From NCBI GenBank assembly GCA_976226885.1, contig OZ320323.1, positions 39,060,001 through 39,124,000 on the forward strand: a stretch of 64,000 nucleotides of DNA. The letters run 5' to 3'. Under the pieces are notes generated by a model. The model was not told the DNA's origin and ran no database searches. It worked only from the letters and a program-made list of their open reading frames with translations. The translations under genes were made by a program, and so were the position numbers. Positions 20,201 through 49,531 of this stretch are shown one piece after another. The DNA comes from Iphione sp. A-MEVVRFRX5 (Eukaryota). Position 1 is the first letter of the stretch. Each line of letters opens with the position of its first letter.

Positions 20201-23200
20201 TTCTGAGGATATCAGGAGGACAGCCAAGGATGGGAGAGCACCTGATGGGGTGTTGGAACTTCTAAAGGTGACAAGAGGATTGTAACACAGTGTGTTAGAA
20301 GTAACAACGTTAATATCCATAAGATTATGATATGCACAAGTGATTGGGATACTTAACAAACTGTTCTTATTTTGACTTTACTCGAGTAACGTTATGCAAC
20401 AATTGAGATAATGTTCTGCTGGGCCATGTTATTAAATGGCACCATTGAGGATATCAACACTGGCAGTTTTGGGTAGAGCAAACAGTAATAAGACATGTAG
20501 AACCGATATGTGGACATAACAAAAAGGTACCACTTAATGGAGATCTCAGTAGTCTGTTTCCCCAAGTGTTGACAAGCAGAACCTGGTAAAGACATCCATC
20601 AAGTAGAGTTGTGACCTAAGGTCAGGGGTTTAATTGAAAATTGACCAGGAGGTACCCAGGTCAGGTCTTAAGGTAAGAGATCATATGAACTCTGACCAAA
20701 GGTTATAAACTCTGACCAAATTGTTGTGATGAATGACTATATGGTCATGAACTGATGGTGTATAACAATTATGATTTCTCCTGTCTTTTTGGAGAGCTCT
20801 GAAGATCTGGCTTGTACGTATCTTCTATGCCGAATAAAGAAAACTAAACTGGAAGCCTTGGTCATTTTAAATTGTGTTACAGGCTGACCAAGGATGGCGG
20901 AGCACCTCAGGAGAGCTGTGGAGACATTTAAGAGCAACAAGAGTCGCACCTGGAGAGAAGTGTGAAATTCTAAGAGTGACAGGAGGATGGTCGAGGATGG
21001 GGATAGCACCTGACATGGTGTGGAGAGTTCTAAGACCAACTGTAGGAGGGCCAAGGATGGGGGTAGCATCTGACGAGGTGTAGTGAGTTCTAAGAGTGAC
21101 AGGAGGATGTTCGAGGATGGGGGAGCGCCTATTGTAATTTTCAAACATCTGAAAATATTATGGTGTTTGATGAAGATAGTACTCATAAATAGAAAAGGAA
21201 AAAAGTCAACTTACAGAGTTGAGTTTAAAGAAGAGTGACAATGTATCACTCAAGTAGGAAGAGGATATTTTATTAAAAGACTTGTTCTTGCAGATTAGGA
21301 AACAAAATACAGTTGAATGACATTAAGAAATTAGGATAGATTAAAGTTGTGAAAATGATGCTATATAGCAAAGCAAAAGAATTGAGGTAACAAAGACTAG
21401 ATGTGAAATCTTCTGTATTTGCAGATGCATTGGAGGATGTACAGTTAGGACTCAATAACCGCATACTGGAAAACCAAATCATCTGAAATCGGGATGGTTT
21501 TTGCTGGAACGAATCGTATTTCACTATATACATATTCAGATGACCAAAATATTTCATTCCCAAATCCAAACGCTTTTCTTTGATAAAATTACATTATAGT
21601 TGTATTCAAAAACTGTATGCTCCTCTTTCAAAGGGATAGCTGTTGGTTGAGGAGTTCGGGCCTCACTTCGGTGTTTCCTACTGCTCCCCTCCCCCTAGCC
21701 CTTCAATGGGTTAGCTACCAGAAAAATCCAAAATTTGAATGAAATTGGCAGAAACGGTGACTATTCGGTTTTTGAGTTGTGACTGTACACAAAGACAGAG
21801 GAAGTATAGTATATTTGTGGATGGCCTATTATGCCCAAAATGAGAATGTTTATGATGGAGCCATTGTTTTATTTAAAAGGATGAATGTTAAAAAGAAGTA
21901 GAGCAGACTTGGACATTGCATACTGGCAAAAAAGCAGAGATGGTTGATCAATATTGTATATGAGAGTCTCCTTCCTTGAGGCTAAGCAAAGAGTAATGCT
22001 AGCAAGAAAGGAATTGAAGGGTATGGACATATAGGTAAATGATGAACCTGGAAACCAGTATTGAGGTCACAAAAATGTTCAAAGAATCCAAAAATAGATC
22101 AGGTATAGCAGTCCATCTCTCTCTCTCTCTCTATATATATATATACATATATATATAACAGAACACGGTGACTGCACACGAATTGTGGAATGTGTATGTG
22201 TATGCCATGGCCAAGGCTGAGGGAAATGGTAATGTGGCCGAGTGGTATTTCTGGCCAAAACTCAGGCAACAATAAACACGCATAAGGGTCACACAAACCC
22301 AACAGACAAAGAGGACAATGACAAAATAGGAGTTATGGAAGGATTATTAACAGCCAAATATGATCAGTGTTTGGAAACACAGCAGAAGTTACAGGCAATC
22401 GAACAGATGATTCTCACTGAGGCCGCTCACGACACATTCTGAGGAGCAGGTGTACCACTTTATTCGAAGTCATTATTCACAGGTTAGTTCCATGGAAAAA
22501 TCACCTAATTACCACCTAAGAGTACTTGATTCAGTAAAGTCATGTTTTTGATAGGTAACTGAGATGTAATTAGCTTGAAATTATGACAATTATGGTTACC
22601 CACCCCTACCTAGGGTTTTGGCTGGTTGTAACCTGAAACAGACCTATTTTTTTGAGTGGGGGGCCTAAGTGCTAGTACCTGGGATGAATCACTATGAAGG
22701 GAGGTATGGGTTAACAGGAAATTTATCACAGAAAGCATGCAAGGGTACTATTATTAGATCAGAATGATTTATGATTTCCCAAATGGAATACTAAAATAAG
22801 AGGTTATTTTAATGGCAGATAGTTACAGAAGAGGATTAAAAAGACTATTTTAATTTTATGGCTGTCCCATTGAGGTGTTGTACTGTCCAAAAGCCAGGAT
22901 AAAAAACAGAGCAGTTAAATTTGTTACAGTGGTCTTTCCATATGCACCAGATGTTTTTGATGTACAGAGAGAATTCAAAAACCGAATGATTGCCATTTCT
23001 GCTAAAATCATTCAGTTTTTGGATAATTCGGATTTCGAATTGTGGCAAATCCCATGGAGAAATTGCCAAAAAACAACTATTTCATGGAGATTTTGGCAAA
23101 TTCCATGGAGAAAGTGCAAAAAAACATCAAATTTCAGGGAGAAAGTGCCAAAAAACAGTGAATTTCCAGGAGAATGTAATCCTTGGGAGAGATCTCATCA

Positions 23201-26200: not shown

Positions 26201-29200
26201 GCATCCTAACAGACCCAGTTTCAGTATGTTGACACTTACACACAGTACTGCATTTTGGTTGTTTTGTTCACAAATGGGATTAGTGTTGCATGCAGCTTGC
26301 AGTGTGAGTGTCCAGTGGAACATTTACTACTGTCGTTGGGTGCGTTTGGCAGGGCATCCCTCCTGTGAGATTCTCACTGACCCAAAGTGTTAATAGCTGG
26401 AGCATGCCTGGCATCATGCAATGCAGAGCCCCTCAGCCTGTCCATCTTCTTCAGGTGAATGGGGAGCAGGTTCCACTCCCTAAGACCCAGGTACCTTAGG
26501 GACTTGGTGTACCTGGTGCTCTTAGGCCTAGGCACAGTTCCACGGATCTCTTTACCCTGTCATGTTTTGGTCAACTTTTTTAGGGATATCAGCCCTAATC
26601 AGATCTGTTTGTGGATTGCACATAGGCCTTTTTGGGTGACGAGGTCCACTACCCATGTCACCCCCAACTTTCGATGTAGCTTTGCTGCAGACAGGTGGTT
26701 GTTGCCCTGTAGGCAGACTCAGGCACACCTATTAAGGTGTACCTGCAGGTCTACTGTTACTCTGCTTGGGAGGCCATACCATAGCACTGCATGGTATTGG
26801 TAGTGGGTGACAACTAGACTCTTGAAGAGCATTAGTCATGCATTCAATGGTAAGAAGCTTTTAGTTCTTCCTACCTTCAGCCACCCAGGTCTTCATTTTG
26901 ACCTCCTTGCAACACTCACGCATGTTCAGCCTCCCATCTAGCCTGTACCCTAGAAGTTTAGGGCTCTTGTCCAGGCATAGTGGCTGCCCACTTAGGGATA
27001 GATCCATGGGTATACCATGTGCTTTGGCTAGAGGGCAGTAGGTGCATTTAGGCGCACTCAAGACCAGCCCCTCTTGATGACACCACACAGAGACAGCATT
27101 TAGAGCCATTAGCGCAGTACCGCAGAGTCTTAGCAGATCATGGGCAAACACCACCACCGAAAGGTCATCAGCATAGATGACTGCCTTACAGTCCACCGGG
27201 AGTGACCCCACTATGCTGTTGATGGCCAAGTTGAATGCCACAGGGCCAAATATTGAGCCCTGTGGCACCCCTTGCTTAAGGACCCTTACTTGTGAGTCCT
27301 TCCCTGCACAATGTACGAACGGGCACCTATCATTCAGGTATGACCTAACCATCTTCCTTACTTTTGGACCAGCACCCATCTCACTTAGCCGATTCACAAC
27401 TGTTTGATGGGGTACCAGGTCAAAGGCCTTCTTTAGGTCAAAGGCAAGCAAGCAAGTGTAAAGTCCCTCATTTGTTAGGTCCTGGACATGGTTTACCAAG
27501 TTGACAATTGCTGTTTCAGTCCCTCTTCCAGCCCGGAAACCATGTTGGGTGGACGTTATTGAGCCGTTTGACTCTAGCCTCTCGACAATTTCTCTAGTGA
27601 ACCATCTTTCACAGAGCTTCAATTGCACTGGGAGAATAGAGACAGGATGGTAGTATGAGAGTCGGTCGACGTCTCCCTTTTTGTACACTGTAGTTACCCG
27701 TACACACTACCAACTCCTTGGTAACTGGCCAGTCCTGTAGATTTCTGCAAATAGCTAGGCTATGAAGTCGGGACAGAGTAGCAGTAGTGGCTTCAGAATC
27801 TTGGTACCTTTAATTCCAGAAGATTTCTGGACATTGATTGTTTCAACCAGCTTGTGGGCCTGTAAGGGAGTAGGAGGAACAATGTCAAATCCATCCAATA
27901 GTAAGTACCCATCAGTGTTCTCATCATGCTTGGCAGGCCCCGCCAGTCTTTCAACTTCTTCAATGAAGTAGTTATTGAATGATGTTGACAATGATTCTCC
28001 ATGTGCTCACTCCCAATCAGTACTGTCCGGTATTCTGGTAGTGAGATTAGGAGAGCATGGAGGGAATTTATCATGGGCAAGGCCTTATTGTATATAAAAT
28101 CTTTATTTATACTGGCAAGAATCATACATTCAGTATTTGCAGCCAGATTTTCAATACATCAAACTGAGATTACATACATTCATTCAATCTATACCGGAAC
28201 AACTAATTAAGGTAATAAAAAGAAAAATGAAAAGAAATGTAAAAGTAATTAGTTACTTAATCAATTAACTAATTAAATTAACCAGTTTTAGCTATGCTTC
28301 AGCATATATACTACAAAGTGTATTCAAAGCTCCTATCCATTAATATTATATCTTAGTCTAAGGGATGTGTAATTTTATATATAAGACCAATATTAATTAG
28401 ACCACGTCCATCCCAAGTAATGGAATAAGCACTTCATTCATTTTGTTTCAGTTTTTGGTATTAGACAACGTCCTTCCTGACCATTTTCCATGAGACAACG
28501 TCCATCATAACAATATCTCTCATTATTAATGCAAACTGTTGTTAAGTTTTCTATTATTCAACAATTCCACATATTATTGACAACATCCTTTCCTGGGTTA
28601 AGTTTTAGACCAATTAGAAGCCACTAGTTTAACACTTCATGATACCATATAATTCGACTTGATCCTTTTGTGGAGTTGTGTAGAATGGCCGAGTAGAGAA
28701 GACGTGTCTTGGTGCTCTCCCGGATTTCTCGCTCATATGTCAGCATGGGAAGGAAATGAATCAAACCAATTTCATCATCGGGGAATGGTAGTTCCATGCA
28801 ACTGAGATCGACGTCTCTAAATGACCTACGCCGCTCAACTCTAGAAGAAATGCATAAGAGGATGTCGGCAGATTTGAACATGAGCGACAATAGGGAGAAG
28901 GTCGACAATCAGCAGATGGATGCAGATATGAATCCTGGTAAGGAACCTGACAATGGTGACCACGCCAAGTCGATGGGTGTCAATGCGAGTGAACCCCGAA
29001 GTGACAGTCAAGACTGTGACTGCCATGAGCGGCTATCCAAACTCGAGGACACTGTGACTAATCTGAGACAATTTATCAACGTTGAGTTGAATAGGCTAAA
29101 AGAGGAACTAAACAGTGTTCGAGACGGCGGCGACTCAACTCAATCGGGAGATCGGGCGGATATTGATAAGCTGGTGGACAAGCTTCAGAGGGACATGGAG

Positions 29201-32200
29201 CAATCCCAACGGAAATTATCTGAGTTGGATCGTAAGTGCAAAATGGTTGATCTGGACTTAATTAGACTCGAGATTAACGACAGATGTAGACGACTAGTGA
29301 TCGAGGGTGCACCTACGAAGGACCACAACGCAATGAGACATTACGTAAACAAGTTAGTTTGGGAAGTGGCCAAGATCAAAGGCACGGAGGTTGAAGACAT
29401 CAAGGTTTTCAATGCTGCCAAGGAAACCTGCAGGGTGGGCGTGCTCCTTACTTCTATAGAAGCGAGGAATTTGATTCTCAAAGGCAAGTCTACATTGGCT
29501 AAACGTGAGCAGTACAAACATGTATTTATTAAGGAAGATCTACCAACTAGTGCACTGAGTCTTAACAGTCGGCAACAGAGGCTAGCGGCTAAGGCGCGCG
29601 AAAACGGTAAGCGCGCGATTGTCAAGGGACTTGACCTAATTGTGGAAGGTGAAAAATTCACTCCGCTGGACGAGGAATTTCTTCCTGACTATCTCATGCA
29701 TGAAAATGCCCATGTGTGCACAACGGATGATGAGGTGCGTTTTGATATTGATCATAAATTTTTCTCTATGATGTCGTCAAATCCGACTATTGTTCACGGT
29801 AAACAATTTGGTTCTCCAGAATTAGCGTTTCAATTTTCGAAATCGCGCATGCTCAACGACACGAAAGCTCAACGGGAGATCTGCCGAGCTAAATCGAGTG
29901 AAGACGGTCGTAAAATTGGAAGTTTGATCAAGGACTCAGAAGAATGGGCATCAAATTCCGAGGTAATACTTGAGGAAACCATGTGGGGAATGATTTCAGC
30001 TAATCAGGAGGCCCAATCAATGTTGTTGCAGACTGGTAACAGAGAAATCATCTACGATAACCGAGATACGACACTCGGTAGCGGTTGTGCCCAGCTGAAT
30101 GTAAACAAAACTGTAATTGATCATTCACAAAGTGGGGAGAACAGGCTGGGTAAGGTATTAATGAAGATTCGGGAGAATTTACGTCTAAGATGACTGTAGA
30201 ACTCCAGCAATTACACCAATCGAACTCATTTTTCGACATATTTATTCTGGTGTACTTTATTCGCTGTTCTTTTCATACACAGCGACAGTGTTGAGACATC
30301 CAAGGTCGGGGTCCGTGTCACATCAGACTCGTATATTGATATTTGTCGACACAAGAACAAAGATGTCAGTTGATAGGCTGAAGGATGTGGTGCATACTCT
30401 ACCACCAACAGTCATTCACATCATATACATGAGGAGATGCTCGTACAGGCGGATCGTGCGCTGGCTACAGTATACGGAAACTCGCCGCTACCACCTTGTC
30501 ATGACGGCGATTGGTATGTACGACTGGGTCCGTCGCGAAACGGGGCAATGGGCAGTCACTACAGGCAGCCCAAGCGAATATTCTGCCCGGCAGGATTGGT
30601 GTTTCAAAAGGATCCGGCAGCTCGTAGAGGAGAGAGATGGGGCATCGACAAAGTTGATTCACGCCTGTGCTTCGAGTATCGACATTCACGCAATGGAGCT
30701 GGACATTTTGGACCATGAGGAGGAACAAGCGAAGATTGATGCTGCAGTGGTCATTCACAACTTCTCTTGTGAGTGGTCAAGTGCCAGGCACGGCATGGAC
30801 ACCTGCATGCTGGATTGGCCGATTTCCAGGCTGACTGCTGGGAACATCGTCAATGATTTTACTAGAGTGAATTCGGATGGATTCACTCCGACTGACGCAA
30901 CTCAGCCTGAATGGACTCATATGGTGCTACGGTTTCTTAGGGAGTTCATCAGAGAATATGGACATCAACATATCTGTTAACTCAAACATGCTGCGCTCTT
31001 GCTGTCGTTTTTTGCTATGTGTAGAGTCTGCTGAATTATCAGCCTATGCGTTATAGGGTATGCAAGTACCAAACAATTGTCCTAACTTCGGCCAACAATG
31101 TACATTACCGTGATTGGAGCTCAAGATATGTGCATTTCACGACTCTTTGGATATATTTGCCGTATTATCTGTATTAGTATCACTAGTGTAATCAGGGTCA
31201 GAGAGTGTTTGTATTGTGCATATCACGACTTTTTGGCTATATTTGCCGTATTATCGGTATTTGCATCCTTAGTGTATACGGGGTCTGAGAGTGTTTATAT
31301 CCCTGGAGACGCATTTACATGTGCTTGTCTCATACAGTGACTGGGAGTGTTTGTATCGTGCATTTCATGACTTTTTGCTACATTTGCCGTATTACCTGTA
31401 TTTGCATCATTGGTGTAAACTGGGTCTGAGAGTGTTATATCCCAGGAGACGCATTTACTAGTGCTTGTTTCATACAGAGACTGAGGGGCTTGTTCTTGCA
31501 CAAATCAATTTATGCGCCTTCCACACAAAATCCTTATTTATCACTGTGTTGTAATCATACAACTGTTTCCTCATATATAGTTGTCCACGCTTCAACGTTA
31601 CTAGTAGTAAGTCAACCGTATGCCGACGTTACTAGTAGTAAGTGAACCATATGCTGGATCGTTTATCCGGGAGAGCACAAGGGTATTGAATCGTACATTG
31701 AATCTTATATTGAATCATTTATTCCATCCTTTTTCATCCTTTCGCGCGCTACCAATTCTGACCATGAAGGGTATTAGGTTGTTAACTTGGAATGTTAGAA
31801 GCCTATCCAACAAAATTTCTGAAGTGTCTGATTTGCTTCATGCAGAATCTATCTCTATAGCATGTATTACCGAGTCGTGGCTAACTGACAATCACAATGA
31901 TGCAGAGGTCGACATCCCAGGTTTCAACATAATTCGGGCCGACAGGGTTCTGGGTAGAAAGAAGAGGGGGGGTGGGCTATTGATCTATGTCAAGGACAAT
32001 TTTTCTGTCCTATCAATAACGAAGCTGTCATTTGAAACTAGTGCCTGTGAATTCCTTGGAGTTGTCGTAAAGATGGGCAACCACCGGCCGCTGGAATTGC
32101 TCGTTCTGTACAGGCCCCCGGAGGATAAAATAAATTCTTCTCTTGCGGCAATCAACGCAGCATGTAGCAGCTTCTTCAGTAGGAAGAGACGGGATAGGAT

Positions 32201-35200
32201 TATAACGGGTGATTTTAACTTTGACTATCATGGGTGTGGCAGGGCGGGCACCGCTATCACTAACCTCCTATCTGGTAGGGGATTTACACAGTTAATATCA
32301 CGTTCGAGTATGCTAGACTCGAACCGTCTGCTCGATCAAATTTGGTGTGATTTTTCTGGATGCTGGGAGCTAGACCTTCTCATGGGATTTGTGAGTGACC
32401 ACTTGCCAGTAGGGATAAGAATTAAAAAAGGGACATCAGCTAAAGTAGTAGAAAAGAAAACAATCCGCAAATGGGATGGGGTCAATGTAAACGAGGTCCA
32501 TAAGAAATTGCAGGATGCGGGCTTGTTGGAGACCTCGGGGAACCATGAAAAGGTATGGGATGATCTGATAACGTTCACTCAGAAGGAGTTGGAAGAATGT
32601 TGTCGGCGGAAAGAGGTGACTAGGAGGAGGGACAGGGATGGTTTTTCCCCATCTTTGGCCCTGAAGGAAATATGCAAAGACAGAGCCCATTTCTTCAGGA
32701 AATGGAAGACCGACTCATGTACAGACAGTAGGAATATATTCAAGTTTCTCAGTAAGAAAATTAATTCCATAGTCAGACGGGAGAAGAAGGAATATTGGTG
32801 TAACAAACTAAGGGAGGTAAAGGGTTCTCAAGCAGGAAGCTGGGGTGTAGTGAACAAGCTGCTCGGCCGCAGTCAAAAGAGGGAGACACTGCCTGATGAG
32901 ATTACGGGTGTATCTAACAACACTCCTGACCCAGTCACTCGCAATCCCAAAAATCTGGCAACCAGCTTTAATGATTTCTTCTATGACAAAGTTCGGACAC
33001 TATGTCAGAGTGCTCCGAATTGTAGGGAGAATGATTTCTTGCCATCCAGTGGCAGGTATGACCTCACTCCTCCCACCCCATCTGAGGTTGCGTCAATAAT
33101 AGCAAAGGTGAAAATCATAAAACCTTTGGGTATTGATGGTGTTCCAACCAGAGTCTTAAAGCCGTTGATGCTAATGATACCAGAGGTACTTTCTTGGATT
33201 TTCTCTGAGATTCTCCGCACTGGGAGTTATCCACGTAGCTGGAAAGTGGCTCGGGTGACGCCAGTGATTAAGAAAGGTGACAAAACTGATCTGGGAAATT
33301 ATAGGCCAGTCTCCATCCTGCCTCTTCCGAAACATGGTTCACTTCGCAAATAATGCAAATAGTCGAGCGGGATAAACTTCTGTCTGATGCGCAGCATGGG
33401 TTTCGAAGAGGCAGGAGCACGGAGACGGCATATGTGAAGCTAATCAATGACATCATGTCTAGCCTCAATCAAGGAGTGTATAGTTGTCTTGTCACATTCG
33501 ACCTAACGAAGGCGTTCGACCTTGTGCCCCACTATAGTGTACTGGCCGCTCTCCATTCTCTTGGTTTTGGCAGAAAAACCGTCAACCTTGTAAAGGGTTA
33601 CCTGGAAGGAAGATCACAGTTTGTCAGATGCAAGGGGGTGGATTCAAATCAACTGGCACTCAAGCAAGGCGTTCCGCAAGGATCCGTCTTTGGTCCGAGT
33701 GCTTTTCTGCTTGTCATTGATTCATTGGCTAAGCAGCTACCACCTGGAGCGCACCCGGTCCTATATGCCGATGACCTGAGTATTCTAATGACTGCGAGGG
33801 ACCTACTCATGCTAAGGGGTACTACTATGAGAGCGATAGCAGCAGTACACTCATGGTGCAAGGCTAACGGCTTTGTCTTAAGCGAAAAGAAATGCTGCTA
33901 CAACATGCTGGGTCGTGCTGCTGGTATACCGCTAGACCTATCACTGAACGGTGAAAGCCTTGACATGCATGACCCAATCAAATTTCTAGGGTACCGTATC
34001 CAGGGAAATCTCCGGGCTAAATCAACTATTGCTAGAGTGGTCTGTAAGATGTGGGGTGCCTCTAAGAAAATCTCTAGGGTGAAGAGATATCTGCCTAGCC
34101 ATGTACGCAGTCAGTTATTCAACTGTCTGGTAGTATCGCATCTGAAATACCATCTTGCAGCACTGTATGGCATCAGTAAGGCAGAGAGGGTAAATCTTCA
34201 AATTCAGGTGAATCGTTGTGCGCGAGCTAGTATCCAATGTGGCTCCTTTCTCTCTGCGAGAAAGTTACAAGACAACTTTGGTGTTCCAAGGGTTGATGAC
34301 CTAATTCAAGAATGGGGATTAAACGCTATTAACCGCGAGATAAACCTGAAACTGCTACCTGCAGACTCTCTCACTAAGACTCGAAGGGGTAAATTACCAC
34401 GAGCAACACTGTCCAAACCTCGAAGTAACCTCTATCTGAAGTCTTTGCGCTATCATGGCGTCAACGCTTGGAACTCATTACCCCCTGACCAAAGAGCTTC
34501 GAAACGTATCATACTGAGGCATTAAGCGAGAGTGTGTTATCGTTGTGGTCGTCTGCAAGTGTTTAACCATGTAATGCTATTCCATCCATGATCTGTATTC
34601 TCATGTTTCTCCTGTCAGTTGCCTACGAAACTATCTGATACTATAATGTGATACATAACCCACAGAGGGGTACTTCTGGTTCTTTCATGACTATAGTTTT
34701 GTGCTTGTTACATTGTATTGATATTTGTCCATAATTGCCCCCACTGCTTATCTGTATACAGTCGAACCAAGATCAGTATTTATCTCTTTCAACCACTTTA
34801 TTCAGATTAATTACATCAATTGCTTGAAATCTGTGATACTTAATTAGGAGACATCTAACGTAACCATCCCAGCACAGTGGATTAACAATGTATGTACTTG
34901 AAGTTTCAACATACCTGTCATTTATCATTAGGTTGTGCCTCAGCTCAACAGAACTCCCTGTGTATGCCAATAACCCATGTGTATGCTGATGTTCACCCAT
35001 GACAGTCTTATAGACATCCAGTCGTTTAATTGTGATACACTCAAGTCAACACTTCCAAACATGCTACTACCTGTATATATCTGCGTCTTGTACCCCTGCA
35101 TAATGCTGTAAAATGTGATACTTCTTTTCTCGAATTTATCGTTTACATGTTTATTCCTGTTATTAATTATCATGCCTTTTGTTCTATAGGGATAAGTCTC

Positions 35201-38200
35201 TGAAATCTCTGTAACTCATTTATAGAGAAGACAAATAAAATCTTGAATCTTGAATCTTGAATCTTATCTCTACGTAGTCTCTTCCACAGACTCTGCATTT
35301 TCTTATAATCATAATAGGTTTCATCAGCACTGAGATTATACCAGATTTTCTGAAATTTATAGATAGCTGATATTTTTGTTGATTCCTTTTTAGGTCGTAT
35401 TTGCGGTATGGGTCTCTTTTTCTGAAGCCTGGTTTGTGTCGAGCCAGAGTATTCTTCAGTCTCATTTAAGCCATAGTAACAATATCCCAATCGCAAAATT
35501 ACTGAATTCCGAATAGCTGCCATTTCTTCCTTGGTGCTCTAGACGGAGGTTCCCTTGGACTATAACCAATTCTATAGACAAGCCTTCTTAGACTAACCAT
35601 CTTCTTATACCACGGACTTTTCTCATTTAGTAACAAGAAAGAGCCATAATCCAGAATTGGTAGAATCATTGATCTAATAATTATTTGGGCATAGTACTGA
35701 TTGATTAGAGTCCTTATGCATTTAAATTGCTTTACCTTATGATAACCTTTCTTCAATAAGTCCCTGATCTGGCTATCCCAGTTTAGGTTAGTAGTAATTG
35801 TGACTCCCAGGTACTTAAATGATGTAACCTGCTCTATTGCTACATCATTCAAGCACACTTGAAAGTTTACCTTTTTCTTACCATAACTGAATGGCATAGC
35901 CTTTGTCTTCTTTAAATTTATTAATATTCTGTTCTTAATAGACCACTGATTTAACAATTCTAAGTCAAGTTGCAAACTGTTTATGGCTTCTTGCCAGGTG
36001 TCACCCACTGATACAATGGCAACATCATCAGCATATAGAAAACAACGTGACCTTTGAAATTCATCAGGCAGATCATTAATAAAGATCAGAAACAACAATG
36101 GACCTAGCAGAGAACCTTGTGGAACACCACAGCTAATCCTGTTTAATTCACTAAACTTAGTATCTACTTTAGTTTTTTGCCACCGATGATCCAAATAGGC
36201 TGTCATTAATGGTATAATTTCTTCTGCCCCAATATTGTGTAACTTTTTTAATATTATTGAGTGGCTCACTGAATCAAACGCCTTAGAGAAGTCAATAAAA
36301 CAGCTCATAGCCTTCTTATTGTCATTAAAGATACTAGTTATATAGGTTGTCATTGAAAATATTGCTGACTCAGTACCCCTGCCACTCCTAAAACCAAATT
36401 GATCATGCGACAGCGTTATTGGTCTTATCTTGGTGAATAACTTGGTTTTGCATTTCCCCAACTTTTATTGATGATCTTGGTGTTGTGAACGGCTTAACTA
36501 TCATTATTGATAAATTGAAGGACTATTATGTTAATGTGGTGAAGGATAGCCTTTGTGAAGTAGGAGGGGACAGATTAATCGTTGGTAACATATAGTCACT
36601 GTACATTTAAGAATGGGTATGCCACCATTTACTGTAAAAGAATGGTGTAATACCCTAGCTGATCTCCGAAATAACAAAACGTCCAATTTTCTAGGGGTGC
36701 CCATGAGATTATTTAAGAAATTGTTTTCTATGAACTTTTACTATTACATAACCGAAGTTTATGTAACAGTAAACTGCTGCAGCAAATGGCTGGGTGCTGA
36801 TATCGTGCTGGTATACAAAGGTAAATGGAAGCAGGAATTTAAAAATTTTAGACCAATCAGTCATCTGTCTCCTGATGTTATAGTTATTGAACACATGGTT
36901 GATAATGGAATACATTTATATTTAGAGGGTGTTAACAAATTAAGTGATTTACAGTATGATTTGCCTATGGTTATAGGGACAGCAATCTGCTTGAAGGGTT
37001 CATCAGTTATTTAATCAAAGGCAACACGTGTCCCTGTGTTTTATCAATTTTCCCAAGGCCTTTAACTTGGTAAATCATGATATTTTTTTGTAAAATCAAT
37101 TTCGACCTTGGAAACATATCAGTAACATGTTTCTGCCTATTTAAGCAGTCATACACAAAAGGTGAGGATAATTAAAGTGGAACCTCTCTACTACAGACAA
37201 AAAGGATTGACCAAATACTGTCCGTAAAGAGGAGTGTCATTTATAGCATGAGTATTTAAACATGAATAGATTTGGTTCTGTTTCCAACATATACATAATG
37301 TGAGGTGTCCTTTATAGAGGGTGTCCTTAGTAGAGGGGTTGGTGTTTCCCAAGGATGACTCCTCAGGCTAACTGTTTTTGATTTTTATTAATGACCGACA
37401 CTTATGCATCATTGGTCCTGATTGCCTTCTATACATGGATGATGCGGTTTGTATTAACATTAACTTTTCCTGTAATTGATTAGGGCAATTAAATGCTCAC
37501 AATTAAACTACAGGAAAGTCTTAATTTCTGACCACATCAATTTCCGACCAAACTTGCCATTCCGACCATTTGTCTCTGGAACGGAAATATTCTCAATACA
37601 TTTCCTATATGTTTGACTATCGATTTCTGACCATATTGATTTCCGACCATTTTTGCCATCTGACCACTCATCTTAGGGTCATTTTCTGTATATTTTACTA
37701 TTGATTTCCGACCTCACACCCTGGAGGGGGTGCCGGGAGAGGTCGGCAGTGTCAACTGCGACCTCTCTGATGTGAGCCTCACACCCTGGAGGAGCTGGTC
37801 GGGAGAGGCCGGGGGTGACAATGGCGACCTCTCTGATGTCTCTCACACCATGGAGGGACTATCTCACACCTCTTTAGTTATCAAATTCAGCACTTTTTGG
37901 ACTTTTAGTCATCAAATTCAGCACTTTTTGGACTTAAAGTCATCAAATTCAGCACTTTTTGGATGTTTCAGAGATTATACACATGCAAGTAGAGAGAGAG
38001 GGAGAAAGGGATATTGCTTCCAACCCAGACCCAGATGTTGGATTACTCAGTATGCTTTTTCACAAGATAGTGCTCCTGGTATTAGTATGATTTATGGGGG
38101 GGTCACAGAAGAAGGAATTAAGGGCGACACCTAGAAAGGTTATAATTATTCCAGACACACTAAGGAGGAAGAAATTCATGTTGTCAACCTATTACTGCTC

Positions 38201-44285: not shown

Positions 44286-44490
44286 TGGCGCGAACGTGAG
44301 CGGACGTGTTTTCACGGACCGGGGGAGTGATTAACTGCATTTATATGAGTGATAAAACTCTTTCTACAATATCCCAGTTCATATCTGAACAGGGCAGGAG
44401 CAACGAGCATTACTTCAAGTAATTCATACTCCATAAGCTAGCAATATACAACACGTTATTAAAAAATCTTGTCTCGTCTACGCGGAGACA

Positions 44491-45088
44491 ATGGCTAACG
44501 CTACAAGTGGTAGCATTGTTTTGGATACCTCAACAGACTCGGCCACTGGCTACGTGGACGCGGTACTACCTACACCAACTGCTGTAATCAAGCAACCGAC
44601 ACCTGAGAGGGTTACAACTGATTTATTTCCACAAGTGTTCAGCACTCCAAGTGAACAGCTACTGAGGACCGATTTAAAACAGAAAGAGGGAACCGTTACT
44701 GCCGACAAATCAACACCAGGGGCTGTGAGTTCGCTACCGCCAACTGAAAATACAAAAGAACAACTATGCAGTATTCCAAATGACGGGGGCATAAAAAGAA
44801 AGGAGGTAAGCCCAATCGATTCTAGTCTTGACCATAAAAAAAATCAAAGATGACATAACACAGGTGGAGAAGCAGTATCAAGTGTTAGTACACATCATTA
44901 CTCGCTCGATTACACTCCCGATAGGGGAGACACGATTAGTAGAGGCGTCAACTGACAGCAAATGGGGAGCTGGTGCGAGTCTCTGCTCGCAGGCGATTGG
45001 TTCTGACGCAGTCACAGGGACAAACTGGGCAGGGGAAATCTTAGCGTCAGTTCGGTCGGGTCTCAGAGCAGAGACCGCCTTAAAATGA
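44491..45088 (+). pseudogene. LINE B ORF1 (frameshift at A8 44836-44843, apparently internally deleted) ending in the C-terminal half of a NADAR domain
   Basis: Low-complexity N-terminus with KRKEVSP...HKK(I)K, then after the frameshift IGETRLVEASTDSKWGAG...TGTNWAGEILASVRSGLR. Confidence 0.72.
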
Positions 45089-45123
45089 GAAAGACGTGGG
45101 GATAGCAGTTCGAGATTGACAGA

Positions 45124-45807
45124 ATGAACAACCATCGATGCCCACCATCGGTGTATTTTTTCACCGACTCCCAAGGAAAGACTCTCGAGGAGGACCTACG
45201 GCGACGGGGAATAAGCGTTACAGTGAATGCGTACCCAGGCCTAGGTGCAGCGGAGGTAACTCGTAAGGTAATGGAATACGAGTTTCATGATATTCCACTG
45301 TACATTATACTGATTGTTGGGACTTGCGATGTTACCAAATTGAATAAGAAAGCTCTGTTACCGGATGGGCGAGTAGTATGACAGATCTACCTAGCTGACG
45401 ACAGTTGTGACAAAATGATTCTTAGACTGTCTGTACTTTTTGAAACATGTTATAATAGACTTGCCAAACAATTCCCATCGACATTTATCATTTTCTCTGA
45501 ATTTTTTTGTCCTGACTTGGTCAAATATAACAAATACTTGTGCGGAGAATCTGTTGCAGAGAAGTACACCAGCCGGGTACAAACAGAGCTGAACTCGGCG
45601 ATGCATGAGCTAAACAACGGGGTGAGGGCCCTTAATAGGGCGCATGGCCTAATGACTCCGCATATAGGCAGCATCATCCATGGGCACGCCAACCGCAGAG
45701 ATACCAACAAGCATCAAAAGCTAGAAGACGGATGTCATCTTGACTCGCTGGGAAAGCTGGAGATGCTGGAAAAAATAGTCAAGTTCCTAGGCAAGTTATA
45801 TTGTTGA
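45124..45807 (+). pseudogene. LINE B SGNH/GDSL esterase ORF (227 codons, one in-frame TGA at 45379)
   Basis: Block I FFTDSQG, block II AYPG, block III VGTCD, block V EDGCHL. Track ORFs 45124-45381 and 45415-45807 are in the same frame, separated by a single TGA. Confidence 0.82.
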
Positions 45808-46433
45808 GCCATGACGAATTGACTGTACATATGTCATCAACGTGAAATTTTGTTGAAATTGTTAGATTTCCCTGACTCATGCTATCGCTGCTTGAGCCAT
45901 GATGAATTGACTATATATGTGACACTAATAACGTGAAATCTGATTGAAATCATTAGATTTCCTAGACTCACGCAATCACCGCTTGGTCCGCCTATGTATC
46001 TATATCGCACACACGTTATATTGCCATGTATCCATACCAAGTATGAAGTGTAAGCAATGTACTTTAATTGAGAAAACAAGCTCAACTACTATTATGTCCT
46101 CCCGCTATAAGACAGGTCTCGATTAAGAGACCACAATGACTCTTTTCATTCATTCATTGATATTGCAAACCCACATATTTTGTATCTGAAGTTGTATTAT
46201 TTTGACTCTCTAAACGCAATGAGAATAAAAATCTTTATGTAACAATGTTTAACTGACCTACTGGTCTCGTCATTGAGACCTAGGTATACGAAAGTAGATT
46301 AATTCATAATCATCCCATTACATCGACCTCCCCCGGTCCGGCTTAATTTCACATCCAGAAAAGAGTGTATAGGCCTTATATAGACATTTCAAAATAATAA
46401 CAAAAACTTCTCGCTTTGGCTAATCAAACTTTA

Positions 46434-49262
46434 ATGAAAAAAAGTACCCCTATTTCACAGGATTGTATAAAATTATTGCACATCAATGTAAGAAGTCTTT
46501 CGAACAAAGTATTGGACATCGGGCATCTAATCACACAGAATTCACCAGACATTATCGCTGTCTCAGAAACTTGGCTAACTGCATTAGTTCCGAACTCTGT
46601 GATTAAGATCGATAACTACAGCATAATACGACAAGACAGAGCATATAAGGCTGGAGGAGGACTAGTGCTATACATCAGGGATGGAGTTGACTACGATGAG
46701 ACAAACTACGGATATCTGAATACTAGCACCAACAACCTTGAAGCATTATGGGTGGGTATTCATCTGAGAAATCGTGAAAAAATGTTTATTGGGGCAGTGT
46801 ATAGACCACCGAAAGGCAACATAAGAAATATGACTGCTACATTAGATATATGTTTAGAAAAAATCTATACAAAAACTGGTAAGATAGTATTAATGGGTGA
46901 CTTTAATATTAATGCGATATCCCCAAACGCTCACTATTTCGAACTATGCCATTTATGTAAGAATTTTGATCTCCATCAAATTATAACTACGCAAACTCGC
47001 TCAACTATACTTACAGATACATGTATTGACTTGTCATTTGTTAGTAAACTTGAAACTAGCAGCGGCAGAGTAATCAAATCATTCATAAGTGACCATCATT
47101 GCATAGAGGTAACAATATTTTGGAAATCTGAAAAACCATGTCTCCCACCCTTTAATTATCGAATCTGGAAAACACCACAGAAGGAGTTATTTAAACTGGC
47201 TATAGATAATTTTGACTGGTCTCGTTACTATCAGAACAGAGACCCGAATTATCTATGGAGCTATCTGGAGTCATTTATTATAGAAACTCTTGACAAAGTA
47301 ACACCACAAAAACGATCACAAACAAAGTGTATAGAAAAGATATGGATTGAAAAGAAAACCATCTCTATGATCACTGAAAAGAATAGACTATATAAAACAG
47401 CACTAAGGCTTAAAAGCCGCAGTCTTTATGAATGAGCTAACAAACTACGCCTGGAAATAAATAAGCAGTTGTGGGAAGATAAATCGAAATTCATCAATAA
47501 GCAATTGAATGAGAATAAGACTAATCCAAAATCATACTGGAAAATTATTAACTCTCTACTCGGAAAGAAAAAAGCTACCCAATCCATATCTCTGTCTCAT
47601 AACAACATAATGATAGCTACTAACAGAATCGCAGATGTGCTTAATGAACATTTTGCAACCATAGGTAGCTCTAGTTATAACATAGACAGTAAACTAATCA
47701 CAGAAAACGTCCCGTATCTGATTGACAACATGAGCCTGATGTCGGTGGATGCTATTCGAGTACTTGAAATGTTAAGAAATTTGGACAAAAACAAACCAAG
47801 TGGCATAGCAAATTGTTCTACTAAGATCTTAATAGATGTTCTGATTATGCTAGTAGACCAATTTGTACATTTAATTAATAGTATTTTAGACTGCAAGATA
47901 TTCCCTTACAAATGGAAAGTAGCTACAATTACTCCATTATATAAGGGAAAAGGGCCGAAAAATGATGCAAACTCATATAGGCCCATCAGTATTCTGCCAT
48001 TACCAAGTAAAATCATTGAAAAGATAGTCTTCCAACAAACAACAGATTTCATTGAAAAACATGGCTTATTGTCTAAAACACAATTTGGCTTTCGGAAGGG
48101 AAGAAGTACTACTAATGCAATAGATTGCATTCTAGGCTATATCATGGAGAATATTGAGCAAGGAAATATAGTAGGTGCAATATTTGTGGATTATAAAAAG
48201 GCTTTTGACTCTCTTCAGCACTGCATTCTTCTGAAAAAAAATGGAAAAAATGGGTTTCGGTAATATCTTGAAATGGTTTGAAGATTACTTGACAAATAGG
48301 AAAATTGTGACTAAGGCAAACTGCAAGCTTTCAGAACCCATGGAACTCAGACTCGGTGTCCCGCAAGGGAGTATTCTAGGTCCAATGTTATTTACCTTAT
48401 TTATTAATGATAGTGTTAAATGCTTCAATAAAAGCCTGTGTGTTATGTACGCTGATGATACATTGATCCTTTTTGCTGACAAAACACCAGAGGCCGTTAA
48501 CCGGGTTCTAAGTCAGGAGTTTCATAATCTGAATCATTGGTGTCAATCTAATGGGATCAGAATGAACTACACTAAGACTGAAATGATGATATTTTGCAGT
48601 AAACGCAGTAAACATAAAAATTCAGAATTAAAAATCAACATAGATGGAAATTTCCTGGCCACTGCCTCTGAGTATAATTATCTGGGATTTGTGTTGGATA
48701 AATACTTGGACATTAATCTGGAACTCCAGAAGAAAATCAAAAAATCATATCGTCTGTTGAACCTACTAAGACATGTGAGAAAACAGAGCTCTTCCAATGC
48801 CACCGAATGTGTCCTTAAATCATACTTATCCCGAACCTAGAATATGGCATTGGGTCTATACAATGTCACAATAGTAGGCTATTTCATAAACTTGAACGTC
48901 AACTGGAAAAGGCTATAAGAATTACTTGGGGTGACTTCAGAACAAATTACAATGAACTTTTGATAAAACACAAATTAAATACATTTGCTAGTAGAAGTCA
49001 GTATTATGTAGTCTTGTCACACTTCGAAGTATTGTCAAATGAGCACATGGTAAGAACCAAAACATGCAACCTGCGTCGACCCAGACTGAGAAACCCTAGA
49101 CCCAAAAGAGACCTAATCATGAGACATCCGCGGTACTGTGCTAGAGCAAATTGGAACAAAATAGATTCTGACATAGTTCATATGCCCAAAAACAAATTTA
49201 AGAAGTATTTCAGACAGGAACTTCTAGAGCGACTGAGAAAAGAAAATCTGACAGTCCATTAG
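46434..49262 (+). pseudogene. LINE B ORF2 (APE + RT) with one TGA (47433) and two frameshifts (A8 at 48234-48241; about 48830)
   Basis: LLHINVRSL, AVSETWL, VYRPP, MGDFN, SDHH; SYRPISILP, QFGFRKGRST, DYKKAFD, GVPQGSILGP, YADD. The C-terminal frame continues to TAG at 49262. Confidence 0.92.
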
Positions 49263-49531
49263 ATTTAAAAATCAAGGGCAGATAGGGAATACTGACCATT
49301 TTTTTGTCCCCCGACTATGATTTCCTGATCTACGTTCATACATCGATCCATCATTCAGATCATCGCCATCAGTTTCACAAACCTTGTACATATGTGTATA
49401 CTGTATATACTGTATATATTGTAAATAAGCCGTTGTACATAGCATTAAGAACAGTACCTACAAAACTATAAAATTCTGGCACCAATAAGGACTGCCAGGT
49501 GAAATAATGGAATAAAAAAAAAGAAAAAATT

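What the first reader, a model, noticed from the sequence alone, without database searches (positions are those of the whole stretch)
29738..30187. NADAR (YbiA-like) domain fused to the C-terminus of LINE ORF1p
Seen: FFSMMSSNPTIVHGKQFGSPELAFQFSK...D....REI..AKSSEDGRKIG...EEW...MLLQTGNREIIYDNRDTTLGSG...GENRLGKVLMKIRENLR. This follows the NADAR pattern F-S-N..F.S.E..yQ..K / D....I..A..P...K.lG / W / LL.TG..L.EAS..D..WG.G / G.N.LG..LM..R in order and spacing. The E-x3-Q-x2-K and D positions are retained, while EAS becomes YDN and W becomes L, so it is divergent but not obviously dead. Inference: ORF1p would deliver the domain in many copies onto the RNP.
Basis: partly seen in the sequence, partly recalled or inferred. 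Interest (0 to 1): 0.9.

Follow-up and report, generated by a model that had tools for sequence, protein, structure and literature searches.

The report
LINE ORF1 protein carrying NADAR domain
A jumping gene (LINE retrotransposon) in this animal genome really does have a NADAR domain, an enzyme type that strips ADP-ribose off DNA and RNA bases, on the end of its RNA-coating protein. This copy has lost a key catalytic residue, and the fusion itself has already had one passing mention in print.

Summary
Window 29738-30187 is the C-terminal NADAR domain of a 465-aa ORF (28796-30193). It scores 73 bits against Pfam NADAR (cut-off 35.1). An AlphaFold model (pLDDT 94) matches Phytophthora NADAR 8BAU at Z 20.1. 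The preceding 150 residues match the RRM-CTD of human LINE-1 ORF1p at Z 10.4.

Downstream lie a ~200-aa SGNH-like ORF and an endonuclease/reverse-transcriptase ORF2. The same three-ORF order recurs in independent public assemblies. More than 800 relatives share the ORF1-NADAR layout.

In one lineage the NADAR is as constrained as the RT (pN 0.15, pS 0.76). The family nearly always keeps the catalytic residues.

This copy does not. It keeps E342 and K349, but the YbiA-class Glu is Tyr (Y420) and the Trp is Leu (L427). It departs at 9 of 27 highly conserved columns. The three ORFs have no stop codons, so these are lineage features, not decay. ORF2 has one frameshift.

A related pair that also lacks the Glu still has NADAR as its best-conserved ORF1p part.

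The likely role is an ORF1p-tethered eraser of base ADP-ribosylation, here probably impaired or re-specialised. That is untested.

The scan has reported this fusion repeatedly elsewhere in this genome, and a 2025 paper notes it for oyster LINEs.

The parts
28796..30193 (+). ORF1, 465 aa, intact, with an ATG start and the stop at 30191-30193
   Evidence: ORF list. It is collinear with more than 100 relatives of about 430-470 aa.
29018..29305 (+). Predicted coiled-coil region of ORF1p (aa 75-170)
   Evidence: Long helices at 75-111 and 119-169 in the single-sequence model. In the best heptad register the a/d positions are LIVM in 7/11 and 10/15 cases. The end of this region aligns with the end of the human L1 ORF1p coiled coil.
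29243..29716 (+). L1-type RRM plus CTD of ORF1p (aa 150-307)
   Evidence: VIA-align Z 10.4, rmsd 2.9 A, 150 residues against human LINE-1 ORF1p 2YKP_C residues 141-322. Foldseek E 1.8e-5 to 5e-4 against 2YKO/2YKP/2YKQ.
29699..30190 (+). NADAR domain (aa 302-465 by structure, 321-463 by Pfam). E342 is at 29819-29821, K349 at 29840-29842, and Y420 (in place of the YbiA-class Glu) at 30053-30055.
30288..30980 (+). Middle ORF (230 aa), homologous in position and block order to the SGNH/GDSL-like ORF of related elements. Here block I Ser is Thr and block V His is Thr, and no ATG covers block I.
   Evidence: Alignment A2. Relatives score sub-threshold against Lipase_GDSL_2, 23-28 bits. The window copy has no Pfam hit.
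30981..31619 (+). Spacer before ORF2, with 86/141-bp tandem repeats at 31129-31483
   Evidence: TRF. Comparable repeat-bearing spacers occur in LINE B and in L002.
31620..33353 (+). ORF2 part a: APE-type endonuclease, linker and the start of the RT. It ends in a frameshift just after ...NYRPVSILPLP.
   Evidence: Pfam Exo_endo_phos; three-frame translation
33353..34525 (+). ORF2 part b: RT and a C-terminal domain ending in the ...YHGVNAWNSLP... motif, with no CCHC knuckle
   Evidence: Pfam RVT_1, 95 bits; C-terminus comparison
34526..35265 (+). 3' UTR ending in AATAAA followed by an (AATCTTG)x3.9 tail at 35239-35265

Best explanation
SHOWN. 28796-30193 encodes the ORF1 protein of a ~6.5-kb three-ORF non-LTR retrotransposon: ORF1, an SGNH-like ORF, then an APE/RT ORF2. 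ORF1p consists of an N-terminal coiled coil, an L1-type RRM-CTD and a C-terminal YbiA-class NADAR fold. This layout is shared by a large, old family of elements. In that family the NADAR active site is nearly invariant, and the domain evolves under purifying selection as strong as that on the RT.

INFERRED (family). ORF1p coats the LINE RNA as a coiled-coil multimer and so tethers many NADAR units to the RNP. NADARs are the only known hydrolases that remove ADP-ribose from guanine (and cytosine) bases of DNA and RNA. The domain therefore most likely erases base ADP-ribosylation on the element's RNA, its cDNA or the target site. That would counter a host ADP-ribosyltransferase that would otherwise block translation or reverse transcription.

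INFERRED (this copy). The lineage has replaced the YbiA-class Glu (Y420), the Trp (L427), the S-N Asn (M325), the K-F-x-Q motif and several ADP-ribose-contact residues. It keeps E342, K349, W384 and D424. The canonical reaction is therefore probably lost or much weakened, and the domain persists as a binding or structural module or with altered chemistry. The copy itself is recent but not autonomous, because ORF2 carries one frameshift.
For: NADAR identity: Pfam 73 bits; Z 20.1 to 8BAU and Z 16.6 to YbiA.

L1-type ORF1p: Z 10.4 to 2YKP over the RRM and CTD.

Element context: ORF1-NADAR, then a ~200-aa GDSL-like ORF, then an EN-RT of about 957 aa, in L001, L002 and L004 from two different ENA samples.

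Family size: 812 hits at E<=1e-3, and all 121 aligned members hit Pfam NADAR.

Active-site conservation in 120 relatives: E342 in 118, K/R349 in 112, E420 in 114, W/F/Y427 in 120.

Selection: between L001 and L004 the NADAR has pN 0.147 and pS 0.764, the RRM-CTD 0.149 and 0.822, and ORF2 0.137 and 0.721.

This copy: 9 departures at 27 conserved columns, against a mean of 1.76 for relatives. The residue equivalences agree between HMMER, MAFFT and BLASTP.

Not decay: no stop codon in 4986 coding nt, which has P=0.019 at only 2% neutral divergence.

Glu-less relatives under constraint: in P0048 versus P0272, NADAR is the best-conserved ORF1p part (62% identity, pN 0.226, pS 0.795).

Biochemistry from the literature: the catalytic roles of E43, K50 and E125 (PMC11543638, section 12); removal of G-ADPr from RNA by NADARs only (PMC11833690); removal of C-ADPr, including by a sponge NADAR (PMC12945103).
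Against: There is no biochemical or genetic test of any LINE NADAR.

No ADP-ribosylating enzyme ('writer') has been identified in this host. The pierisin/CARP-1 link is only an idea.

Residue equivalence rests on sequence alignment and a predicted fold; I could not inspect coordinates. D421, next to Y420, might conceivably substitute for the missing Glu.

The two selection tests each use one sequence pair from other genomes, with saturated synonymous sites.

No close relative of this particular family was available, so fixation of Y420 in its active lineage is inferred from ORF intactness, not observed.

YbiA-type NADARs also act on riboflavin intermediates, so a small-molecule substrate is not excluded.
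Confidence: 0.55

Rival explanations
1. The NADAR of this copy is still a working glycohydrolase that uses a rearranged active site. For example, D421 or D424 could take over from the missing Glu, much as DarT1-associated NADARs use an Asp two residues away. It may have a shifted substrate preference.
For: E342, K349, W384 and D424 are kept. The ORF is intact and young. The BC4488-class NADARs show that the acidic residue can move (PMC11543638). Other lineages with Y/N/Q at this position persist, and one pair is under strong constraint.
Against: The strand ends at Y420, so D421 (position i+1) should point away from the pocket, unlike the i-2 Asp of the BC4488 class. That is an inference from the secondary structure. 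Several ADP-ribose contacts are also replaced: the equivalents of R79, Y84, R93 and W133. The K-F-x-Q motif and the S-N Asn, each at least 85% conserved in the family, are lost.
Confidence: 0.22
2. The odd residues are simply post-insertion decay of a dead copy and say nothing about the lineage.
For: ORF2 carries a frameshift. The middle ORF lacks an ATG covering its first catalytic block and has Ser and His replaced. The window leaf has the longest terminal branch in the tree, 1.79 against a median of 0.52.
Against: There are no stop codons in 4986 coding nt across the three ORFs, which has P=0.019 at 2% and 5e-5 at 5% neutral divergence. At most 2% decay would change only a handful of the 150 NADAR codons, not 6 of its 19 most conserved positions. 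The long branch is explained by the lack of close relatives in a library clustered at 50% identity.
Confidence: 0.12
3. The ORF is not part of the LINE. It is a host NADAR gene, or a chance juxtaposition created by nested insertions.
For: The window is a patchwork of LINE fragments in both orientations. No target-site duplication was found.
Against: The same ORF order and spacing occur in L001, L002 and L004. The RRM-CTD has the L1 ORF1p fold. More than 100 collinear relatives exist. All three ORFs lie on the same strand and are followed by a 3' repeat tail.
Confidence: 0.03

Closest known systems
ORF1 proteins of Repbase 'Tx1' LINE families of Crassostrea gigas, noted to contain YbiA-family NADAR domains (PMC12477816, Genome Biol 2025)
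   Same: A NADAR domain inside the ORF1 protein of an invertebrate LINE. Its role is stated there to be unclear, with a suggested part in processing the RNA intermediate.
   Different: That mention is a single sentence with no architecture, active-site, selection or structural analysis. The element here lacks the C-terminal CCHC knuckle and has a ...WNSLP... C-terminus and an (AATCTTG)n tail. By my knowledge of LINE clades that points to the CR1/Jockey group and not Tx1. RT phylogeny against reference clades was not done, so whether it is the same family is open.
Human LINE-1 ORF1p (PDB 2YKO/2YKP/2YKQ, 2W7A, 2LDY)
   Same: Coiled coil followed by RRM and CTD. Z 10.4, 150 residues aligned to residues 141-322. 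It sits 5' of an APE-RT ORF2.
   Different: Sequence identity is only 12-16%, and Pfam Transposase_22 does not hit this copy. L1 ORF1p ends after the CTD and has no enzyme domain.
Phytophthora nicotianae NADAR (8BAU) and E. coli YbiA (2B3W)
   Same: The same fold (Z 20.1 and 16.6). The equivalents of E43, K50, W89 and D130 are present.
   Different: Those are free-standing enzymes. Here the equivalent of E125 is Tyr, W133 is Leu, R79 and R93 are Ser, and the loop bearing Y84 is shortened.
Esterase (SGNH) domain of CR1/L2-type ORF1p, e.g. zebrafish ZfL2-1 (PMC3905857)
   Same: A precedent for a LINE ORF1 region carrying a hydrolase in addition to a coiled coil. An SGNH-like ORF also accompanies the NADAR here.
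   Different: In ZfL2-1 the esterase is part of ORF1p. Here the SGNH-like unit is a separate ORF and the fused enzyme is a NADAR.
C. elegans SNA-3, a three-NADAR protein of the SL1 trans-splicing snRNP (PMC9303266)
   Same: Animal NADAR domains working inside an RNP. One of its domains also lacks the YbiA catalytic residues.
   Different: It is a host gene, nematode-specific, and has no RRM-CTD or retroelement context.
Ectocarpus Gypsy LTR lineage with NADAR at the N-terminus of Pol (PMC12477816)
   Same: Independent capture of a YbiA-family NADAR by a retroelement.
   Different: It is an LTR element in a brown alga, with the domain fused to Pol and not to an RNA-binding ORF1p.

Membership tests
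NADAR superfamily (Pfam PF08719) | Profile match above the curated threshold | tested here: met
   73 bits against a 35.1 cut-off, E 4.5e-20, covering profile positions 11-163 of 163
NADAR superfamily (Pfam PF08719) | YbiA-like fold | tested here: met
   Model pLDDT 94.3. 8BAU: Z 20.1, rmsd 2.4 A, 163 aa. 2B3W: Z 16.6.
NADAR superfamily (Pfam PF08719) | Conserved Glu and Lys of the first helix (P. nicotianae E43 and K50; E. coli C7 E88 and K95) | tested here: met
   E342 and K349 align to them. Their roles are taken from PMC11543638.
YbiA subfamily of NADAR | Glu of the E-A-S/T strand (P. nicotianae E125), the residue that classifies the subfamily | tested here: not met
   Y420 here, against E in 114 of 120 LINE relatives
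YbiA subfamily of NADAR | Asp and Trp of the D-x-x-W-G motif (YbiA D130 and W133) | tested here: inconclusive
   D424 is kept. W is replaced by L427, whereas relatives have W in 87, F in 26 and Y in 7 cases.
YbiA subfamily of NADAR | TIGR02464 equivalog-domain score | tested here: not met
   67-70 bits, below the 73.7 cut-off
NADAR superfamily (Pfam PF08719) | N-glycosidase / base de-ADP-ribosylation activity | not testable with these tools
   Needs an enzyme assay
L1-type (coiled coil-RRM-CTD) ORF1p | RRM followed by the CTD fold | tested here: met
   2YKP_C: Z 10.4, 150 aa, model residues 1-158 against human residues 141-322. Foldseek E 1.8e-5.
L1-type (coiled coil-RRM-CTD) ORF1p | N-terminal coiled coil that drives multimerisation | tested here: inconclusive
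   Long helices and a heptad bias. Oligomeric state was not tested.
L1-type (coiled coil-RRM-CTD) ORF1p | Pfam Transposase_22 match | tested here: not met
   No hit for this copy. Only 3 of 121 relatives hit, weakly, E about 2e-3.
APE-type non-LTR retrotransposon | APE endonuclease plus RT ORF2 downstream on the same strand, and a 3' repeat tail | tested here: met
   Exo_endo_phos and RVT_1 hits. (AATCTTG)n tail. ORF2 is broken by one frameshift.
CR1/Jockey-group versus Tx1/L1-group LINE | RT phylogeny with reference clades | not tested
   No reference TE library was available. The indirect signs are no CCHC knuckle, a ...WNSLP... C-terminus, and nearest named homologues annotated 'jockey', one carrying a PHD finger.

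The most novel reading that the evidence does not exclude
LINE ORF1p-NADAR is an anti-restriction device. Invertebrate hosts would mark retroelement RNA or cDNA by base ADP-ribosylation, for example with pierisin/CARP-1-like guanine-specific transferases known from shellfish, and the ORF1p-tethered NADAR would erase the mark. In some lineages, including this one, the enzyme has turned into a catalytically silent module that is still kept by selection, possibly a reader or shield of ADP-ribosylated nucleic acid.
Probability: 0.15. Interest if true: 0.85.

Novelty: new member of a known kind. Interest (0 to 1): 0.5.

Why it matters
LINE ORF1 proteins are usually regarded as pure RNA chaperones. 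A widespread, selection-maintained fusion to the only enzyme class known to erase base ADP-ribosylation would imply that nucleic-acid ADP-ribosylation is part of the conflict between animal hosts and retroelements. It would also give the poorly understood eukaryotic NADARs a concrete, testable substrate: the LINE RNP. This copy adds the point that lineages without the canonical catalytic Glu persist with open reading frames. In one related pair the Glu-less NADAR is the most conserved part of ORF1p, which hints at a non-canonical role.

Tried and rejected
- The single-sequence AF2 model of the whole ORF1 was useless (pLDDT 41). It was replaced by an alignment-based model of aa 150-465.
- The search for homologous proteins with the full ORF1 gave nothing. 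With alignment A1 it gave only 4 unnamed hits. Two cluster look-ups gave no names or organisms, so the host range rests on Atlas hints (Eukaryota, Annelida) and hidden-organism AFDB rows.
- Pfam Transposase_22 does not recognise this copy. The L1-type assignment rests on fold.
- No target-site duplication was found, and the 5' end is not defined.
- There are no Rfam matches in 28000-36000.
- I tested whether the 570-810-aa relatives are ORF1-NADAR-esterase fusions. They are not: the extensions are low-complexity tails unrelated to the middle ORF.
- I considered neutral decay as the source of the odd active site and rejected it on the stop-codon calculation.
- I considered a host gene or a chance juxtaposition and rejected it on the conserved gene order.
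- Tail type cannot classify the clade: L001 and L004 end in AATAAA plus poly(A), while this copy ends in a heptamer repeat.
Full report
**Observation.** It is the C-terminal third of an uninterrupted 465-aa ORF, 28796-30193. Several independent checks identify it as a NADAR domain:
- Pfam NADAR (PF08719) matches aa 321-463 at 73 bits, E 4.5e-20, against a cut-off of 35.1.
- The riboflavin-type NADAR model TIGR02464 scores 67-70 bits, just below its 73.7 cut-off.
- phmmer against PDB sequences finds the Phytophthora nicotianae NADAR 8BAU and E. coli YbiA 2B3W.

The domain is real and lies at the stated place.

**Fold and architecture.** A single-sequence AlphaFold run failed (pLDDT 41). I therefore aligned aa 150-465 with 120 relatives (A1) and re-folded, obtaining pLDDT 94.3 and pTM 0.85.
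- Foldseek against the PDB returns 8BAU (E 6e-9), YbiA (2.5e-6) and then nine chains of the human LINE-1 ORF1p trimer (E 1.8e-5 to 5e-4).
- VIA-align places model residues 153-316 (ORF1 302-465) on 8BAU at Z 20.1, rmsd 2.4 A, 163 residues, and on YbiA at Z 16.6.
- It places model residues 1-158 (ORF1 150-307) on human ORF1p residues 141-322 at Z 10.4, rmsd 2.9 A, 150 residues. That span is the end of the coiled coil, the RRM and the CTD.
- Upstream, aa 75-170 are predicted as long helices with a heptad bias.

ORF1p is therefore coiled coil + L1-type RRM-CTD + NADAR.

**Element context.**
- After ORF1 comes a 230-aa ORF (30288-30980).
- A 640-nt spacer follows, with 86/141-bp tandem repeats.
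- Next is an APE endonuclease-RT ORF2 split by one frameshift just after ...NYRPVSILPLP: 31620-33353 and 33353-34525.
- The 3' UTR ends in AATAAA plus (AATCTTG)x3.9 at 35239-35265.

The same order recurs elsewhere: an ORF1-NADAR of about 440-470 aa, a roughly 200-aa ORF with faint GDSL/SGNH similarity, and an EN-RT of about 955-960 aa. I found it in L001 and L004 (ENA sample ERZ25767047) and in L002 (ERZ23498523). The ORF is therefore the first gene of a tricistronic LINE, not a host gene.

ORF2 has no CCHC knuckle and ends in a Y-x-G-x-x-x-W-N-x-L-P motif. Its nearest named homologues are annotated 'jockey', and one carries a PHD finger. By my knowledge of LINE clades this points to the CR1/Jockey group and not L1/Tx1. 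No reference phylogeny was possible.

**Family and selection.** An exhaustive HMMER search of 1.84 billion representatives gave 812 hits at E<=1e-3 and 96 at <=1e-10. Most are 400-500 aa, collinear over the whole ORF1, and only 22-28% identical. All 121 aligned members hit Pfam NADAR, and three weakly hit the L1 Transposase_22 model.

In the 120 relatives the active-site positions are almost invariant:

| Position (window numbering) | State in 120 relatives |
|---|---|
| E342 | E in 118 |
| K349 | K in 84, R in 28 |
| W384 | W in 113 |
| E420 | E in 114 |
| 427 | W in 87, F in 26, Y in 7 |

Between two diverged elements of one genome (L001 versus L004), synonymous sites are saturated. The NADAR is as constrained as the RRM-CTD and the RT:

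| Region | pN | pS |
|---|---|---|
| NADAR | 0.147 | 0.764 |
| RRM-CTD | 0.149 | 0.822 |
| ORF2 | 0.137 | 0.721 |

The domain therefore matters to the element.

**State of this copy.** Schuller et al. (PMC11543638, section 12, read) give the residue roles for the P. nicotianae enzyme. E43 and E125 hold the distal ribose, K50 is essential, and K75, R79, Y84, D86, W89, R93, D130 and W133 contact ADP-ribose. E125 defines the YbiA subfamily. The HMMER alignment to 8BAU, MAFFT and BLASTP to the nearest relative P0034 agree on the equivalences:
- Kept: E342 (=E43), K349 (=K50), W384 (=W89), D424 (=D130).
- Changed: Y420 (=E125), L427 (=W133), S376 (=R79), S388 (=R93); the Y84 loop is shortened.
- Also lost: the family's S-N Asn (M325) and its K-F-x-Q motif, which reads M-I-S-A here.

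Overall the copy departs at 9 of 27 columns that are at least 85% conserved. Relatives show a mean of 1.76 departures and a maximum of 9.

This is not decay after insertion. The 4986 coding nucleotides of the three ORFs contain no stop codon. That has probability 0.019 at 2% and 5e-5 at 5% neutral divergence. The substitutions must therefore have been present in the active lineage that produced this copy.

The middle ORF shows a parallel pattern: Ser to Thr in SGNH block I, His to Thr in block V, and no ATG covering block I.

**Glu-less relatives.** In a FastTree of A1 the window sequence has the longest terminal branch (1.79 against a median of 0.52). It sits in a 12-member clade (support 0.94) that also holds P0048 and P0070. 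Those two have Asn at position 420 and Asp or Thr at position 342. P0136 elsewhere in the tree has Y-C-N at 420-422.

I fetched the genes of P0048 and P0272 (a member of the P0070 cluster), both from sample ERR14368249, and compared the regions of ORF1p:

| Region | aa identity | pN | pS |
|---|---|---|---|
| NADAR | 62% | 0.226 | 0.795 |
| RRM-CTD | 56% | 0.292 | not recorded |
| N-terminus | 39% | not recorded | not recorded |
| C-terminal tail | 32% | not recorded | not recorded |

NADAR domains without the canonical glutamates can therefore still be under strong constraint. This is a single pair, so it is a lead and not proof.

**Mechanism.** The shown steps are the domain identity, the fusion to an L1-type ORF1p, the gene order, the family-wide conservation and the constraint.

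The inferred step for the family rests on analogy and on published NADAR biochemistry:
- By analogy with trimeric, RNA-coating L1 ORF1p, the fusion would place many NADAR units on the LINE RNP.
- NADARs reverse guanine ADP-ribosylation on DNA (PMC11543638).
- They are the only hydrolases that do so on RNA (PMC11833690).
- They also remove cytidine ADP-ribosylation, including a sponge enzyme (PMC12945103).

The family's domain therefore most plausibly erases base ADP-ribosylation on the element's RNA, its cDNA or the target site. Candidate writers in invertebrates are the pierisin/CARP-1 guanine-specific transferases of butterflies and shellfish, cited in PMC11543638. That link is speculation.

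For this copy, loss of the YbiA-class Glu and of about half the ADP-ribose contacts makes the canonical reaction unlikely. I rate an impaired or re-specialised domain at about 0.55, a still-active rearranged site at about 0.22, and pure decay at about 0.12.

**Comparison with what is known.** One paper in the searchable library touches this (PMC12477816, Genome Biol 2025). [quoted passage not shown] Searches for DUF1768 or NADAR together with ORF1 or non-LTR found nothing else.

Accessory enzymes in LINE ORF1 have a precedent in the CR1/L2 esterase (PMC3905857). NADAR domains inside an RNP have one in nematode SNA-3 (PMC9303266).

The scan itself has already followed up this fusion several times on other pieces of the same genome, with the same conclusions: a real, widespread fusion, one passing mention in print, and many copies lacking the catalytic residue. 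I reached the paper and the architecture independently before reading those notes.

**Verdict.** It is a further member of a kind that is barely described but already noted in print. This particular copy has a non-canonical, probably impaired active site and a frameshifted ORF2.

**Limits.**
- There is no biochemistry.
- The host taxon is unknown.
- There is no close relative of this family and no reference RT phylogeny.
- I had no access to model coordinates for a residue-level view of the pocket.

Noticed in passing
window 22248-22499 (+): A third, decayed NADAR fragment with in-frame stops. tblastn matches P0054 aa 301-392 at 33% identity. It still shows the canonical T-E-A-A strand, unlike the intact copy.
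   Followed up: partly
window 44286-49531 (+), 'LINE B': A second, very different three-ORF LINE. Only the C-terminal half of its NADAR remains (44828-45088), with canonical V-E-A-S and W. Its SGNH-like ORF is split in two (45124-45381 and 45415-45807) but keeps T-D-S and D-G-C-H. Its EN-RT is broken into three ORFs (46416-48840).
   Followed up: partly
window 30288-30980 (+): The middle ORF of this element aligns to the SGNH-like ORF of L001, L003, L004 and L002. It has Thr for the block I Ser and Thr for the block V His, and no ATG upstream of block I. It has no Pfam hit, whereas relatives reach 23-28 bits on Lipase_GDSL_2 (cut-off 32.9).
   Followed up: partly
window 31129-31483; window 45804-45985; L002 4677-5699: The spacer between the SGNH-like ORF and ORF2 carries tandem repeats in three unrelated elements: 86/141 bp x2, 91 bp x2 and 485 bp x2.1. 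This may be an internal promoter or a translation-control region. It is unexplained.
   Followed up: no
window 26861-28125 (-) and 35499-36461 (-): The element is flanked on both sides by 5'-truncated LINE RT fragments on the opposite strand. The left one is 48% identical in its RT to this element's ORF2, so it is a related but distinct family.
   Followed up: partly
L001 13494-13835 and L004 7865-8200: These two related elements share a conserved 3' end followed by AATAAA and a poly(A) of 19-23 nt, whereas the window element ends in (AATCTTG)n. Tail type therefore varies within the NADAR-LINE group.
   Followed up: no
P0047 (1075 aa, ENA contig of 13 kb): A protein with five tandem NADAR domains (Pfam 442 bits, 5 stretches). 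It is reminiscent of the multi-NADAR nematode protein SNA-3. Its context was not examined.
   Followed up: no
P0026, P0048, P0070, P0074 and other relatives of 570-810 aa: About a third of ORF1-NADAR relatives continue past the NADAR into 150-350 aa of low-complexity, probably disordered tail (Q/N/S/P- or RG-rich). The tail is not the esterase.
   Followed up: partly
window 28385-28514 (+): Just upstream of the element there are three to four copies of an AGAC(A/C)ACGTCC(A/T)TC motif at 30-94-nt spacing in AT-rich DNA. It is unclear whether this is a 5' UTR or promoter monomer of the LINE or unrelated flank.
   Followed up: no
AFDB cluster hits K1R4Q0 ('Enolase 4', residues 704-855) and K1QS99 ('Neuroligin-4', residues 208-357): Gene models with unrelated names contain a NADAR-like segment. 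They may be chimeric annotations that swallowed a LINE ORF1. This is a lead only; the organism was not shown.
   Followed up: no
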